A stretch of DNA of 64,000 nt from positions 12,400,001-12,464,000 of the forward strand of contig NC_088813.1 of assembly GCF_011386835.1 (NCBI RefSeq), written 5' to 3'. The position numbers and the translations under genes were made by a program. This DNA comes from Chrysemys picta bellii (lineage: Eukaryota). Numbering within the stretch: the stretch's first letter is position 1; each line of letters begins with the position of its first letter. This document shows positions 21,747 to 58,376 of this stretch, one piece after another. The notes beneath the pieces are model-generated. The model was given only the letters and a program-made list of their open reading frames with translations. It did not search any database and was not told the DNA's origin.

Positions 21747-29614
<7,868 letters not shown>

Positions 29615-31242: not shown

Positions 31243-34200
31243 TTATGACCCAAAGTGGGAGAGTCCAATCGACACCAGAACCATCAGACCCACAGTGATC
31301 ATTAGAGGCCAGCTCACAGCAGCAGCCAGCAGTGGCGGGGCTGCGACCTTCTTCTTTCGGGACACAGCGGTTGACGGCTTCTTTTTTTGCTTCTCTCTTA
31401 AGCACTCCAGCAGAAACGTCAAGTTATTGGGCGGAAAGAATTTGGTGCCAAACAGGTTGCATTTGGGAATGAAAAAATGAGGCAGATGAGCGGTTGCCAC
31501 CTGCTGAATGAAATTGGCCCGGACCCTTTCGAAACAGTGAGCAACGCTGGAGGGGTTCCCATCCTGGGCCTGCTTCCATTGCAGCAGCGTGTGAAAGAAA
31601 GACGTCTCAGCATGGTAGGAACTCAAAGGAGCCAGTTCCAAGGGGTGCTCTGTCTTCAGGGCTCCCAAAAGACTTTCCAGCATCTGCAGACATTCTGGCC
31701 TAGAGAGGAGAAAGCCACATTCTTGGCATTAGCAATTTCTGTTGCTATTGGGTCAAATCCCAAGCTCCTTACCGTTTTAATTCAGGCTGTGACCTCGGTG
31801 GGAATTTTGCCTAAGTAAGGGCCTGGGGGCCACAGTGTGGTAGGCATTTGACCTACGAGAATGTAAAAAAAGGGGACAAATGCTGCTCCTACAGAGTAAG
31901 TCAACGAAGTTAAATATAGCAACATTGGATTTATGCAGGTGTAACTGAGAGCAGACTCTATCCCAAGGTCCCTGCCCTAGAGAGCTGACAATCAATGGGC
32001 CCAATCTTGCAAATGCTGACTGCCAGGCATACCGTGAGCAGTCTCATTGACAGATGGGATTACTCAGAAAAGTAAGCATTACGCTCAGTAATAGTGTTTG
32101 GAGGATTGGGCTCTAATTAATGAGGTCTGCCTGGAGAAGGGGGAGGGGGGGTAATGCAGCTGAAGCAAGTGACAGAGTATTGATTTCAGTCTAGGTCTTA
32201 TTAGCTCCCTAGTTGTTGTTTGTTGTTGTTTTTAAATCACTATTAAAGTCTCAGCTATTTTACTTTCGCTAGAAGTTGAGCATGGATCACGCCTGGCTAG
32301 CGCTAAAGGGAAATGAATATACTCAAATGCATCATCATGTTCATTAATAATACTCTATACTTCGTTTGCACCTTCCGGCTGAGGATCCCAAAGCACTTCC
32401 CACAAATCAGGATCATTGCCCCCATTTTATGGGTGTGTGTGTGTGGGGGGGGAAACTGAGGCACAGACTGGTGCTGTGACTTGCCCAAGGCCCCACAGTG
32501 AGCCAGTGGCAGAGTGAGGAATAGAATCCAGGAGTCTAGATTCCCAACCCTGTGCTCTAGACACTCAGACTCCCAGCTGATAGCAATCAATGCTTTACAT
32601 TTCCATAGCACCTTCTCTGCAAGGATCTCAAAGTGCTTAACAAAAGAGGGTCCAGGTTCAAGTCAGGGTTTCCAGGGCAAAGAAAGTAAACTATGTCCAA
32701 CAAAACATGAAGTTACAGCACTGATGCTAGTCTGGCCTGTCTCGACCCGGGCTGGGGGATACAAAGACCTCTGGCCCAGCCCTGGCTTTCCAGACTTGCA
32801 GACATACTTGGTGTGGCAGTGGTTTGCCACATGCACGTACCTGCGGCACGTGGTCGTCTGACACTTCCGGGTGCTGGTGTGGCTTTTCAAAATCTCCTTT
32901 TCCACATGAGAGAAAGACATTTTCCAGGTCTCTGAAATAACAGCAACCCCAGTGTCAGCCTACACCTCCCTCAGCTGGGCACAGAAGCCAGGCAGCAGAG
33001 GACACTGTACAGGTGATGTGGAAATCATTTGTAATGTATTTTTGATTCCAGTATTGCCTGAGAAGTCACCCCTAACTGTGAAGCTCATAAAACAGCCCCA
33101 GGCCACTGGCTCACCCTCATCCCTCTCTCGTTCCCAGGGCTTCTTCACTCTTCCCTGTGCTATCCCTCCCCAGTTCGGAGTCCCCCCTCTCCTCCCATGC
33201 CTGCCACTCTCCTGGGAACACCTCCTGCTTCCTTGTGGGGTAGCTCTAGGTCGAGGACTTGAACTGAAGGGAAAAGGGGGAGACATCATTCCCCTCAATA
33301 CATGTTATGTATGGGCTCCACCGAGGTCTCCAGAACACACAAGCCCTGTCTCAGCATGGCATACCCCACCAGAGGCTAGAGATACTCTCTGCTGACTCTC
33401 TGCAGCTTTTCTTCTGGGAGACTAGCTTAAGGCCAGTGCATTTACCACAGTGGGATACAGAGAATGTGGGGGCGGCTTTGGCAGTGCTATGAAAAGAGAG
33501 GAGGGGGCATTGGCCCTGTGGGCTGTGTGGGTTCCTTCCCCTGAGGGGGTGTTCATTGTCCCAGCTCTGCACACTACTACACCCTTCTCCAAGCCTCAGC
33601 CTGACAACTCAATCCCTAAGCACTTTCCCAGGAGAACATGCTGTGGTGAGGGAGTTACCTTTGTTATCTTGACCAGGGGCCTGTTTAGCAATGAAATAGA
33701 GGGTCTTCCTCAGATATGGCTCCTTCTCCCCCAACAACTGCTTGACATCCATCCCTTCGTCATTTGAACTGGGCCATTGGCCAGAGATCTCCAGAGCAAG
33801 GACCAGGTCAATAGACATGAATGTGTCACCTCGGTTGTCCACCATCACTAGGGGCACCGCTGGGCTGTTCTGCTTTTTCCTCTCCAGCCTCATCTGCCAT
33901 CCAGGAAAAGGCACTGAGACACCAGACAGACAGTGGACAGACCAATGGGAGAGCTTAGAAAGAGGCAGTAATTCATCAAGGGGCTTGTTTGTGTTTAGAT
34001 CAATGTCAGCCAAAGAAACCAAACCAAACAGAAACTCAACCAAATCCCTTAGGGAAGGACTCCTAGTGGGGAACCCACAGCTTTCCCCAGAAGAGGGATG
34101 TGGGGGGAGGGATAGCTCAGTGGTTTGAGCATTGGCCTACTAAACCCAGCATTGTGAGCTCAGTCCCTGAGGGGGCCACTTAGGGATCTGGGGCAAAATC

Positions 34201-36764
34201 AGTACTTGGTCCTGCTAGTGAAGGCAGAGGGCTGGACTCAATGACCTTTCAAGGTCCCTTCCAGTTCTAGGAGATGGGATATCTCCATAAATGTATTTAT
34301 TTAGATGGAGTCCAGCTCACTCAGCTCTGTGTAGTGTGAAGGATCCCAACTTCAAGGGCCTAATACCTCAGCCTTTCACCTCTGGTGACCTGGGTTCAAA
34401 TCCTACTTGAGATCACGTGAAAATGAGCTTGTGGGTCTCAGCCTAGCCCCTACCTGAGCTACGCTGCAGCTGCTGCTATTTTAAGAATGACTTAGGCCTG
34501 GACGAGCAGGAGATGTCACAGGTCAGGATGGAAGGGGTGATCTGGGTAGCTCCAGCACGGGGACACTCACCTGAGTAGAACACTTTGATGAACTGATCCA
34601 AGTGCTGCCGGAACTCCGCCATGATGCTCCCTGGGGACACAGTCTGCCCGTCCTCCAGCAGGAAGGCGGCTGGAAAGCTGCGGGACTTTCTCAGCAGAGT
34701 CAGGGTGTAGAAGAGCCCATCGTACCCCTCCACCTCAGCGTACTGAATATAATCTGGAATCGGCAGGCTCAGCAGCACGTCAAAGTTATTCGGGTGCAAG
34801 GGCTGTAGACAGAGTCTCCTACTGGAGATGCTGCTGAATTCTTTTCAGGCGAATCCCCACTTCTCCTTTCCTCCACTCATCCCCTTGATCCCATCCCTTC
34901 TCACCCCTCCTTCCTGCTTTCATTCCCTCCCTGATCCAAACTCTCTAATGACCGCCTACCTCCCCTTTTCGCTGCTGCTGTCGCCCTAGAAGGCTCTGAC
35001 TGCTCCCACCACCTACCCTCCCTCTCCTTGTTACCTGGTAGCTGCTCCCCGACGTCAGTTCTCTCACATCCCTGAAGTAGGGTCTCTCGGGACACTCATT
35101 CAGGTAGCTAAAGAACTGTCGGAAGAAGGCATGGAGAAGATCGACTGCGTTGGCCCCATCCAGCTGTTTCAGGCGGAGGGACTTTGCCCTCTCTTTAATC
35201 CGGGTGAGGTTGTCTTTCTTCCAGTCTTGAAAGGTTCGCATTGCAGCTGAGGTCCCTGGTTTCTCACTCAGATCAGCGGAGGCATCTTGGGAATAGACCT
35301 GCCCCAGGTCTCCTAAAGGGAAACATTAGAGATGAGAGATCCCTGGCACTTCAGCCAGCTTCCTCCATATCAAACCATGCTGCTACTGCTTCTCCAATGC
35401 AAGTTTAGGTCCCGATCCTTCTTCCCTTGCTAAACTCCAATAGGGGGAGGAGCTGGGCCTCGTTTTGTGCAGCATCAGTCTTACAAACTGTCGTAAACGA
35501 TTTTGGCGGAAAGAGAAATTAAGGAGTGAAAGAGAAAGGAGACTTGAAATGTGATGGAGGAGTTGGAGACGTGGGGAAGCAGTTCCAGACAGCGGGTAAT
35601 GCAGAGGAGAACGCTCCCATGCAGTCAGTGGGAAGATTGCGAAAAGGAACAGCGGGAGTTGGCTGAGCAGAGGGAGCGGGAAAGAGGAGTAAAACGAGAT
35701 CAGATCTGTGAGGTCAGCTGGAGTAAACAGTGTCAGAGATGCCTTTATCTCAGTCTAAGGGAAGGCTGATGTGTGTGTTTTGTACTGCGAGATGCTGCAC
35801 CTCTGTTAATTCAGACCAATCATAAAAGAAGCCATGCTGGCATGGCTGATATCCACCTTCATTGCGGCTGCAGTGCCTAGCGTACTTACAGGACACTGCT
35901 AATGACAAGGAGAAGGTCCATGGTTTTGAGGTAATAGGATACTCTCCTCCCATAGTGCTGGATTCATCAGGAATTTAGGGATTACCGTATTATGGGGGTG
36001 GGGGACATCTAACCCAGTACCCTGTCTCTGACAGTAGATACTTCCAAAAAAGCATCACTCCATTCCCACCTACCGTAGACTCAGCTATTGTGCAGTATTT
36101 TACCACAGAAGGTAATTTCCTCCTGACCTCAGCCAGTGAGCAGTTTATACCCTGAAGCCTGAGGATCATTGGCCTGGAAAACTTTTAGCTGAATTAGTGT
36201 AAGTGCAGGTGCTATTCTTAATCAGCCAAATGCTTGCACTTTTAAAAGTCCAATTTGGGGTCCCACAGCCGACTCACCCACCCAACTCCCTCGAATCCCA
36301 AAGAGTGGGGAGAGGGGAGGACAATAACCCGTGTCATCTAGCTACCCCACCACATGCTGTGAGATCATCAAACTGAAAAACAGTGAAGCCTGGAGCATTT
36401 CTGAATGGCCATTTACAACCAGTGAAGGTCCAATAGAGATTCCCTGACCTGCAGCTTCCCTGTGGAGCTTGTCCAACTCCACCTTCCACCGGCTCTGGGT
36501 GCCAAGGCTCCGGAGCTGCTGGGAGGTCTCCGGAGGATGGGAGCCTAAACTGTCTAGGTTCCACTGCTTCCTTGCCCTGAGGTTTGAAGATTCGGCTGCT
36601 TCCAATGGGGACAGGGCTCGCTGGCTGGCTGTTCCCTCTGTGTCTCCTGGCTCTTTGCTTCTGCCGGCTCTGCCCTTCCTCTGAAGACCCTTCCATACCC
36701 TACGGTTCTTGGCCGGCGTAACATTGAGGGGCGGAGAGCTTGCACTTAGAGTCGGACCTGCCAT
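31243..36764 (-). CDS. Cyclic GMP-AMP synthase-like (cGAS/Mab-21 family) paralogue with C-terminal hydrophobic tail, 542 aa; complement join(36449..36764,35035..35312,34571..34802,33659..33913,32841..32931,31243..31699)
   Basis: Exons of 316/278/232/255/91/457 nt, all GT-AG with compatible phases 1,0,1,1,2, give 1629 nt with no internal stop. Motifs GSSYQ|PLHPNNFDV, SPAVPL, SIDLVLALE..QWPSS..EG, YFIAK, ETWKMSFSHVEKEIL, SSYHAETSFFH and HFFIPKCNLF match human cGAS in order. Exon 1 is inferred from phase match and Kozak context and is less certain than exons 2-6. Confidence 0.88.
34105..34301 (+). mobile_element. Tortoise polIII/SINE (tRNA-derived head, CR1-like tail)
   Basis: GGGATAGCTCAGTGGTTTGAGCATTGGCC A-box head; tail GGACTCAATGACCTTTCAAGGTCCCTTCCAGTTCTA; AT-rich end. 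Confidence 0.85.

Positions 36765-40953: not shown

Positions 40954-46493
<5,540 letters not shown>

Positions 46494-54479: not shown

Positions 54480-58376
<3,897 letters not shown>

What the first reader, a model, noticed from the sequence alone, without database searches (positions are those of the whole stretch)
31560..35060. Four coordinated changes in the nucleotidyltransferase active site
Against human cGAS numbering (from memory): GSYYEHVK|ISAPNEFD becomes GSSYQ|PLHPNNFD (3-aa shorter loop, E225->N204). K414->E399 (CLQMLE) and K439->E422 (SSYHAE) reverse the charge of two triphosphate-binding lysines, and R376->K364. In contrast G212/S213, D227 (D206), D319 (D311), K362, Y436 and the NLF motif are kept. 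The pattern suggests loss of two-metal catalysis with a preserved pocket, or a switched ligand. The 3-aa deletion depends on my choice of the exon 2/3 junction (35035/34802), the only phase-compatible GT-AG pair I found.
Basis: partly seen in the sequence, partly recalled or inferred. Interest (0 to 1): 0.75.

Follow-up and report, generated by a model that had tools for sequence, protein, structure and literature searches.

The report
Turtle cGAS paralogue with decayed active site
This turtle gene encodes a membrane-anchored relative of the DNA sensor cGAS that selection keeps intact and that is expressed, but its catalytic pocket has been dismantled step by step, so it most likely works as a non-enzymatic immune regulator, not as a cyclic-dinucleotide synthase.

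Summary
Transcript contigs from four runs confirm a six-exon minus-strand gene (36764-31243, 542 aa), including the disputed 35035|34802 junction. All residue assignments and numbers are right: G194/S195, N204 for E225, D206, D311, K352, K364 for R376, E399 for K414, Y419, E422 for K439.

The 3-aa shorter loop is a real 9-bp genomic deletion in exon 2, not a splice choice.

The changes are not coordinated; they arose at different times. K414E, K439E and R376K occur in all turtles. The loop deletion occurs only in Testudinoidea. E225 became K and then N only in emydids (GAG>AAG>AAC), and independently G in sea turtles.

The gene belongs to amniote clade B of the old tail-anchored cGASL/cGASb lineage. 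The 14 pocket sites are near-invariant in 34 sequences of cGAS, fish cGASL and amniote clade A. They decay only in clade B (turtles, squamates, platypus).

The gene is still under purifying selection (dN/dS 0.3-0.7).

Best reading: a tail-anchored pseudoenzyme, probably a regulator or scaffold like fish cGASL. Loss of catalysis is inferred, not assayed. The scan's other notes on this window already flagged the same gene.

The parts
36448..36764 (-). Exon 1: start codon at 36764; basic, low-complexity N-terminal region (aa 1-106)
   Evidence: Joint 36448|35311 in 4 runs; translation; pLDDT below 50 in the orthologue model
35035..35311 (-). Exon 2 (aa 106-198): spine helix, ending in G194-S195-S-Y-Q. 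The 9-bp (EFG) deletion lies between 35038 and 35037
   Evidence: Joint 35035|34802 in all 4 runs; DNA alignment with Lepidochelys, Chelonoidis, Emys and Malaclemys loci
35017..35034 (-). Intronic 18 nt that would add VTRRGR if the alternative in-phase donor AGG|GTAGGT were used
   Evidence: used in RefSeq models P0117, P0149 and P0150; absent from transcript contigs
34571..34802 (-). Exon 3 (aa 199-276): strand with the first two triad positions
   Evidence: Pfam Mab-21 weak hit; aligned to cGAS P223-...
34785..34787 (-). Codon AAC = N204, the position of human cGAS E225 (first metal-binding carboxylate)
   Evidence: codon series GAG (Chelonoidis), AAG (Emys), AAC (Malaclemys, window), GGG (Lepidochelys)
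34779..34781 (-). Codon GAC = D206 (human D227), kept
33659..33913 (-). Exon 4 (aa 276-361): holds D311 (33807-33809, human D319) and K352 (33684-33686, human K362)
   Evidence: Pfam PF03281 28.5 bits
32840..32931 (-). Exon 5 (aa 361-391): TWK(364)MSFSH and E371. K364 (32921-32923) stands for human R376. Shortened, cysteine-poor zinc-thumb remnant
31243..31698 (-). Exon 6 (aa 392-542 plus stop): Mab-21 C-terminal lobe, basic linker and C-terminal hydrophobic tail
   Evidence: Pfam PF20266 55.6 bits; cGAS chains E about 1e-13
31675..31677 (-). Codon GAA = E399, the position of human K414 (ATP-positioning lysine)
   Evidence: role of K414 from PMC4897736
31606..31608 (-). Codon GAG = E422, the position of human K439 (ATP-positioning lysine)
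   Evidence: role of K439 from PMC4897736
31258..31329 (-). Tail anchor (aa 515-538), preceded by KQKKK...RKKK
   Evidence: helix 522-543 in the Emys orthologue model; near-invariant among turtles

Best explanation
The window carries the emydid-turtle copy of an old vertebrate cGAS paralogue. It lies in the tail-anchored cGASL/cGASb lineage, in amniote clade B, between RPL11 and an oocyte-type eEF1A gene. After the A/B duplication in early amniotes, clade B lost the constraint on its nucleotidyltransferase pocket. In sauropsid clade B the two ATP-positioning lysines were replaced first; both are Glu in turtles. A 9-bp deletion then shortened the GS (nucleotide-binding) loop in Testudinoidea. 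Last, the first metal-binding Glu drifted to Lys and then Asn in emydids. The rest of the protein is kept by purifying selection and the gene is transcribed and spliced: the Mab-21 fold, the remaining pocket residues, the basic linker and the C-terminal membrane anchor. The protein is therefore most likely a catalytically inactive, membrane-tethered pseudoenzyme. By analogy with fish cGASL/cGASb, it would act through binding, for example on STING or MAVS at ER or mitochondrial membranes. Shown here: gene model, residue states, their phylogenetic order, selection and fold. Inferred: loss of catalysis. Inferred by analogy only: membrane location, partners and direction of regulation.
For: Splicing and expression. 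Protein and numbering. Phylogeny: the cGAS versus cGASL split has support 100/100; amniote cGASL 100/99; clade A 99/97; clade B turtles plus squamates 100/99, and 95/92 with platypus. Grass-carp cGASL sits inside the teleost cGASL clade. Pocket table: the 14 sites and the 11-aa GS loop are near-invariant in 34 sequences of cGAS, fish/shark/lungfish cGASL and clade A. They decay only in clade B. Turtles have K414E, K439E, R376K and E225 as E/G/K/N. Squamates have D227E, D319S/N, K414E/Q and K439R/Q. Platypus has G212A, D227S and D319R. Column 204 is among the 4 most variable of 436 in turtles. DNA shows the 9-bp deletion, a conserved donor, and single-nucleotide steps GAG>AAG>AAC. Selection: pairwise dN/dS is 0.32-0.67 for the gene and 0.21-0.75 for the core. 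Synonymous versus nonsynonymous change, window against Lepidochelys, gives Fisher p=4e-7. ORFs are intact in the window, Malaclemys, Emys and Chelonoidis. Fold: the Emys orthologue model matches cGAS at TM 0.80-0.87, with a C-terminal helix. Literature: alanine at any triad residue, or E200Q/D202N in pig cGAS, inactivates it, and K414, K439 and E383 position ATP (PMC4897736). The chicken E225 equivalent is needed for signalling (PMC7563795). Killifish cGASb makes no measurable cGAMP in HEK293T cells (PMC13694710). Grass-carp cGASL/cGASb binds STING and lowers the IFN response (PMC7582293 and PMC11264591).
Against: No enzyme assay exists for any clade-B protein. Asn can still ligate Mg2+, and D206, D311, G194/S195, E371, S366/S368 and Y419 are all kept, so residual or altered activity is not excluded. 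Pelodiscus, Mauremys, tortoises and Platysternon keep the full E-D-D triad. Catalytic loss in the turtle ancestor therefore rests on the two Lys>Glu changes and on later repeated triad hits. dN/dS of 0.3-0.7 is only moderate constraint. The functional analogy is to fish proteins that keep an intact site and share only about 35% identity. The structure models are of orthologues (Emys 96% and Pelodiscus 81% identical), not of the window protein. The GS loop has pLDDT below 50 in both, so modelling says nothing about the effect of the deletion.
Confidence: 0.65

Rival explanations
1. The protein is still an enzyme or a nucleotide receptor with a rewired pocket. The new carboxylates E399 and E422 and the Asn at 204 would change metal or substrate chemistry (a 'switched ligand'), so clade B makes or binds a different small molecule.
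For: Most pocket residues and the fold are kept. Both lysines became the same residue, Glu, and stayed Glu in 13 of 14 turtles, which looks more like selection than drift. Several turtles keep the whole triad. MAB21L1 binds nucleotides despite an incomplete triad (PMC4897736).
Against: The triad has been hit independently at least four times in clade B: sea turtles (E>G), emydids (E>K>N), squamates (D319>S/N) and platypus (D227>S, D319>R). Positions 414 and 439 are not uniform across clade B: E/Q/R/K and E/R/Q/K. Column 204 is among the least constrained in turtles. Two added negative charges should repel a triphosphate.
Confidence: 0.17
2. The gene is on its way to becoming a pseudogene, and the active-site changes are part of general decay with no remaining function.
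For: Long stem branches of clade B (0.31, with 0.23-0.35 for its subclades) against 0.15 for clade A. In the partial list of differences among close relatives, nonsynonymous changes outnumber synonymous ones 25 to 8. The exon-1 homologue is broken in Lepidochelys.
Against: ORFs are intact across turtle lineages that include softshells and sea turtles, and in squamates and platypus. dN/dS is clearly below 1 (p=4e-7 and 0.004). The tail anchor and NTase core are highly conserved. Spliced transcripts occur in four runs. Within turtles, clade B evolves no faster than the intact clade A (paths of about 0.20 against 0.29).
Confidence: 0.06
3. The short loop and odd residues are artefacts of a wrong gene model or a wrong assembly.
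For: An alternative in-phase donor exists 18 nt downstream and is used in three RefSeq models.
Against: All four transcript assemblies use 35035|34802. The same 9-bp gap and the AAC or AAG codons are present in independent genome assemblies of Malaclemys, Emys and Chelonoidis. Contigs of organisms A and B show no difference from the window in exon 3.
Confidence: 0.02

Closest known systems
Fish cGASL / cGASb (grass carp cGAS-like protein P0275; killifish and zebrafish cGASb)
   Same: Same ancient lineage, separated from cGAS proper with 100/100 support. Both have a Mab-21 core plus a C-terminal hydrophobic tail. Reported as non-producers or poor producers of cGAMP and as STING-binding negative regulators.
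   Different: The fish proteins keep every pocket residue (GS, E-D-D, K414, K439, R376), the 11-aa loop and an intact zinc thumb. The turtle protein has lost or altered these. Identity is only about 35%.
Canonical cGAS (human, mouse and pig structures; turtle cGAS P0027)
   Same: Same fold (TM 0.80-0.87). Both Pfam Mab-21 domains are present.
   Different: About 28-32% identity. E225N, K414E, K439E, R376K, a 3-aa shorter GS loop, a degenerate zinc thumb and a C-terminal membrane anchor. It is a separate gene: turtles also have true cGAS.
Amniote cGASL clade A (RefSeq 'cGAS-like', e.g. Chrysemys picta bellii XP_042711040.1 = P0003; crocodilian P0105)
   Same: Sister paralogue in the same genomes, 46% identical. 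The Crocodylus copy also has a hydrophobic C-terminus.
   Different: Clade A keeps all 14 pocket sites, the loop length and the zinc-thumb cysteines. The turtle clade-A models end without a hydrophobic tail.
MAB21L1/MAB21L2
   Same: Mab-21 fold proteins with an incomplete triad and no detected NTase activity (PMC4897736).
   Different: MAB21L1 keeps the two first carboxylates and K414/K439 and loses the third Asp. It is soluble and developmental, and only distantly related (E=0.1 to the window's last exon).
MiD49/MiD51 (MIEF2/MIEF1): membrane-anchored, catalytically inactive NTase-fold adaptors (my own knowledge)
   Same: As proposed here, a nucleotidyltransferase fold reused as a membrane-tethered adaptor.
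   Different: They have an N-terminal anchor, not a C-terminal one, and belong to a different branch of the family. No sequence comparison was made here.

Membership tests
Mab-21 / cGAS-type nucleotidyltransferase fold | Pfam Mab-21 (PF03281) and Mab-21_C (PF20266) above the gathering score | tested here: met
   Exon 4 scores 28.5 bits and exon 6 scores 55.6 bits against a cutoff of 24.1.
Mab-21 / cGAS-type nucleotidyltransferase fold | Bilobed cGAS-like structure | tested here: met
   AF2 model of the 96%-identical Emys orthologue has core pLDDT of about 90. The top 50 PDB matches are all cGAS, with target TM 0.80-0.87. The window protein itself was not modelled.
Catalytically competent cGLR/cGAS (motif of Li et al. 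2023, PMC9980059) | h[QT]GS | tested here: inconclusive
   The window has L-T-S-G-S. GS is present, but the residue before G is S, not Q or T.
Catalytically competent cGLR/cGAS (motif of Li et al. 2023, PMC9980059) | X8-20 then [DE]h[DE]h | tested here: not met
   The spacer is 8 aa, the lower limit. The motif reads N-F-D-V, so the first acid is Asn.
Catalytically competent cGLR/cGAS (motif of Li et al. 2023, PMC9980059) | Third acid h[DE]h | tested here: met
   I-D311-L, aligned to human D319.
Canonical cGAS | ATP-positioning K414 and K439, and guanine-reading R376 | tested here: not met
   E399, E422 and K364; roles from PMC4897736.
Canonical cGAS | Zinc thumb H(X5)CC(X6)C | tested here: not met
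   The window has KSH-TST-RKC-QTTTC-RR: shorter, with single cysteines where cGAS has CC pairs.
Canonical cGAS | Orthology (groups with cGAS of other vertebrates) | tested here: not met
   It falls in the other main clade with 100/100 support. Turtles have a separate cGAS.
Vertebrate cGASL/cGASb lineage | Groups with shark, lungfish and teleost cGASL, including grass-carp cGASL | tested here: met
   Careful ML tree, 100/100; P0275 identified by its UniProt name.
Vertebrate cGASL/cGASb lineage | C-terminal hydrophobic tail | tested here: met
   aa 515-538. Tails are also present in shark, teleosts, Crocodylus, squamates and platypus.
Tail-anchored membrane protein | Single TM segment within about 30 aa of the C-terminus, no N-terminal signal, post-translational insertion | not testable with these tools
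   The sequence fits: a 24-aa hydrophobic helix ending 4 aa from the C-terminus and a basic flank. Insertion and target membrane need experiments.
cGAMP synthase activity | Makes 2'3'-cGAMP or another nucleotide product | not testable with these tools

The most novel reading that the evidence does not exclude
Clade-B cGASL proteins of reptiles and monotremes are not dead. Their pocket would be re-purposed: the lysine-to-glutamate swaps create a new metal or cation site, so the protein senses or makes a ligand other than ATP/GTP-derived cGAMP at a membrane surface. The emydid N204 form would be one state of an evolving specificity.
Probability: 0.1. Interest if true: 0.8.

Novelty: new variant of a known kind. 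Interest (0 to 1): 0.45.

Why it matters
cGAS is a central innate immune sensor, yet its vertebrate paralogues are barely studied outside a few fish papers. This locus shows that reptiles and platypus keep a second, membrane-anchored cGAS lineage that therian mammals were not found to have. One of its two amniote branches has given up the catalytic pocket while staying under selection. That gives a natural series for separating the enzymatic from the scaffolding roles of the cGAS fold: intact clade A, then Pelodiscus clade B with an intact triad, then sea-turtle and emydid clade B with a broken triad. It may also show how reptiles tune STING or MAVS signalling. For annotation, 'cyclic GMP-AMP synthase-like' should not be read as an active synthase in these species.

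Tried and rejected
1. The word-indexed protein search could not take the spliced protein, which has no single reference, and an exon query would only see short proteins. I therefore ran the exhaustive representative search with the last exon and continued with the full-length hits.

2. Exact-sequence contig look-ups failed for Pelodiscus and both Mauremys proteins. No softshell or geoemydid DNA was available for the codon analysis.

3. I compared AF2 models of the short-loop (Emys) and full-loop (Pelodiscus) orthologues to see whether the deletion disorders the GS loop. Both loops have pLDDT below 50. A short helix at 196-202 appears only in Pelodiscus. This is too weak to use.

4. A syn/nonsyn count from the transcript-contig difference table gave 8:25, or omega of about 0.9. 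That table is truncated (46 rows hidden) and dominated by the disordered ends, so I replaced it with the full codon alignments.

5. The grass-carp cGASL and zebrafish cGASa/b primary papers are not held in the library. Their content is cited only through reviews and later papers.

6. Literature searches for a reptile or turtle cGAS paralogue, or a cGAS pseudoenzyme, found nothing specific.

7. Rejected: that the window gene is the turtle cGAS orthologue (tree), and that the short loop is a splice artefact.


Full report
**Gene model.** The finding lies in a minus-strand, multi-exon vertebrate gene. Transcript contigs from four public runs (four studies, three coded species labels) were laid on 31243-36764. 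They skip exactly five introns: 36448|35311, 35035|34802, 34571|33913, 33659|32931 and 32840|31698. Joining the six exons gives a 1629-nt ORF of 542 aa with GT-AG at every intron. A second in-phase donor 18 nt downstream (exon end 35017) would add VTRRGR. No assembled transcript uses it, although contigs can hide a minor isoform.

**Residue mapping.** The mapping to human cGAS was checked against the ranges reported for the 522-residue human chain 9l69_A and the 507-residue mouse chain 7bum_A.
- N204 = E225 and D206 = D227.
- K352 = K362; D311 = D319 follows from the aligned SID/SVD motif.
- E399 = K414.
- E422 = K439, K364 = R376 and Y419 = Y436 follow from the aligned SSYHxK and TWRxSFSH motifs.

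Pfam finds both Mab-21 domains. The nearest solved structures are all cGAS.

**What the gene is.** The exhaustive protein search with the last exon found only 85 related representatives. Names from cluster look-ups and word searches and a careful ML tree (quick version) give a clear picture.
- Jawed vertebrates have two old lineages, split with 100/100 support: cGAS proper, and a second one here called cGASL.
- cGASL holds a shark protein, lungfish, and teleosts including the grass-carp 'cGAS-like protein' P0275.
- It also holds an amniote group (100/99) that splits into clade A (crocodilians and turtles, 99/97) and clade B.
- Clade B holds turtles plus squamates (100/99). Platypus attaches outside them (95/92) on a long branch, so its place is less sure.

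The window protein sits in clade B. It is 97.6% identical to Malaclemys and 96.9% to Trachemys, so the genome is an emydid turtle. It is 81% identical to Pelodiscus, about 48-50% to squamate clade B, 46% to the clade-A paralogue of Chrysemys (P0003) and about 32% to turtle cGAS.

Many cGASL proteins end in a hydrophobic tail, as this one does at aa 515-538: shark, teleosts, Crocodylus, squamates and platypus.

The gene lies between RPL11 (about 24680-28470, minus strand) and two head-to-head oocyte-type eEF1A genes (40957-46415 minus, 54964-58373 plus). The Lepidochelys locus has the same neighbours, and RPL11 also follows the gene in Emys and Malaclemys.

**The active site in comparison.** I tabulated 14 pocket positions and the GS-loop length in 58 sequences. 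In the 34 sequences of cGAS proper, fish/shark/lungfish cGASL and clade A, the pattern G-S...E-x-D...D...K...R-x-S-x-S...K...S-Y-x-x-K is all but invariant. The loop is 11 aa wherever that region is complete and well modelled. Only clade B departs from this.
- All 14 turtle clade-B proteins have K439E and R376K.
- 13 of the 14 have K414E; Mauremys mutica has K again.
- Position E225 is E in Pelodiscus, Mauremys, Chelonoidis, Gopherus and Platysternon.
- It is G in three sea turtles, K in Emys and Terrapene, and N in Trachemys, Malaclemys and the window.
- Squamates have D227E, D319S/N, K414E/Q and K439R/Q. Some also have S213G/D and K362E.
- Platypus has G212A, D227S, D319R, R376Q, S380F and Y436F.

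The triad has thus been hit independently at least four times within clade B. Among the turtles, column 204 is one of only 4 of 436 columns with four states.

**DNA level.** Genome loci of Lepidochelys, Chelonoidis, Emys and Malaclemys were aligned to the window.
- The shorter loop is a 9-bp genomic deletion (GAGTTTGGG, coding E-F-G) just before the last codon of exon 2.
- It is present in Chelonoidis, Emys, Malaclemys and the window, and absent in Lepidochelys.
- The protein models show it in Mauremys, Gopherus and Platysternon too, but not in Pelodiscus or sea turtles. It is therefore a Testudinoidea character.
- The donor AG|GTAACA is conserved in all, so the deletion is not a splice shift.
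- The codon at position 204 reads GAG (Chelonoidis), AAG (Emys), AAC (Malaclemys and window) and GGG (Lepidochelys). Each step is a single nucleotide.

The four changes therefore have at least three different ages and are not coordinated. The lysine swaps and R376K came first (all turtles; the lysine positions are also replaced in squamates). The loop deletion came next, and E>K>N came last.

**Selection.** Codon alignments give pairwise dN/dS of 0.32-0.67 for the whole gene and 0.21-0.75 for the Mab-21 core. The excess of synonymous change is significant: p=4e-7 against Lepidochelys and p=0.004 against Chelonoidis. ORFs are intact in the window, Malaclemys, Emys and Chelonoidis. Within turtles, clade B changes no faster than the intact clade A. 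The stems leading to clade B are long: 0.31, plus 0.23 for turtles and 0.35 for squamates, against 0.15 for clade A. This is a maintained gene with a released active site, not a dying one.

**Structure.** An AF2 model of the Emys orthologue (short loop, K at 204, 96% identical) has a confident core and a disordered N-terminus (1-137). It has low-confidence GS-loop (193-200) and zinc-thumb (381-388) regions and a C-terminal helix at 522-543. Its top 50 PDB matches are all cGAS, with target TM 0.80-0.87. A Pelodiscus model with the full loop is equally unsure in the loop, so modelling does not show what the deletion does. The window protein itself could not be submitted, because a spliced product has no single reference.

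**What the residues mean.**
- De Oliveira Mann et al. 2016 (PMC4897736) state that alanine at any triad residue, or E200Q/D202N in pig cGAS, gives inactive protein.
- The same paper states that E383, K414 and K439 are essential for positioning ATP, and that T211, S378, R376 and S380 read the guanine.
- The chicken equivalent of E225 is needed for signalling (PMC7563795).
- The cGLR search motif h[QT]GS-X8-20-[DE]h[DE]h-...-h[DE]h (PMC9980059) fails here at the first acid.
- In fish, the cGASL lineage already looks non-canonical despite an intact site. Killifish cGASb makes no measurable cGAMP in HEK293T cells, and zebrafish cGASb is described as minimally active (PMC13694710).
- Grass-carp cGASL/cGASb binds STING and lowers the interferon response (PMC7582293 and PMC11264591).

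**Reading.** The most economical account has three steps.
- The cGASL lineage was already doing something other than bulk cGAMP synthesis.
- After the amniote A/B duplication, clade B lost selection on the pocket altogether.
- The emydid state (N204, short loop, E399, E422, K364, degenerate zinc thumb) is a late stage of that decay.

What remains conserved is the fold, the linker and the tail anchor. This points to a binding or scaffolding role at a membrane. Catalytic loss is inferred from comparative data and from mutagenesis of homologues. The partners and the direction of regulation are inferred only by analogy.

The main rival is a rewired pocket with a new ligand. It draws some support from the uniform Lys>Glu swaps in turtles, and it cannot be excluded without biochemistry.

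**Novelty.** The gene is annotated in RefSeq as 'cyclic GMP-AMP synthase-like' in many reptiles, and its fish relatives are published. I found no paper on the reptile or monotreme clade or on its active-site decay. Other notes of this scan on the same window had already flagged the gene, its tail anchor and its zinc thumb. I tested the lineage and tail claims independently.

No human contig was handled; human cGAS entered only through PDB chain numbering.

Noticed in passing
window 32840-32931 (exon 5): The zinc-thumb region is shortened and has lost cysteines in hard-shelled turtles (KSH..RKC..TTC.RR against NNH..TCC......KCC.RK in cGAS, cGASL and clade A). Pelodiscus keeps a longer version. 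One run (X4, organism C) has a 6-nt insertion after 32866, the same 2-aa insertion (RS) as in Emys and Terrapene.
   Followed up: partly
window 40957-46415 (minus) and 54964-58373 (plus): Two head-to-head eEF1A genes of the 'oocyte form' type lie upstream of the cGAS-like gene. RPL11 lies downstream at about 24680-28470 (minus). Lepidochelys has eEF1A and RPL11 on either side of the gene, and RPL11 also follows it in Emys and Malaclemys.
   Followed up: partly
protein clusters of P0116 and P0118; P0160, P0090, P0002: Fused gene models in public annotations have merged unrelated proteins into single 90% clusters, so eEF1A sequences appear as 'members' of cGAS-like clusters. Examples are a 922-aa Caretta model in the same cluster, presumably an eEF1A plus cGAS-like fusion (not inspected), and Crotalus cGAS-like plus RPL11.
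   Followed up: no
L001:4181-4547 (Lepidochelys olivacea): The homologue of exon 1 has 30 nt of gaps, and the Lepidochelys CDS built on the window's exons reads with three in-frame stops; I take these to lie in exon 1 but did not locate them. Sea-turtle models start from a different first exon, so the basic N-terminal region seems lost or replaced there.
   Followed up: partly
P0144 / P0143 (Mauremys mutica), P0138 (Platysternon): M. mutica has Lys again at the K414 position (CLQMLK), whereas M. reevesii has Glu. Platysternon has Ser at the base-stacking Tyr (Y436 position).
   Followed up: no
P0104 (Pelodiscus isoform X2): A predicted isoform skips exon 4 entirely, removing the third catalytic Asp and much of the central sheet. 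No transcript evidence was examined.
   Followed up: no
window 34100-34390 (intron 3): A tRNA-like SINE copy in the intron attracts very deep, heterogeneous RNA contigs with loose ends at about 34101-34106. This reflects many genomic copies of the repeat, not expression of this intron.
   Followed up: no
(database searches): No bird or therian member of the cGASL lineage (clade A or B) appeared among the hits. Only their canonical cGAS did. This suggests loss in those groups, but absence was not tested on genomes.
   Followed up: no
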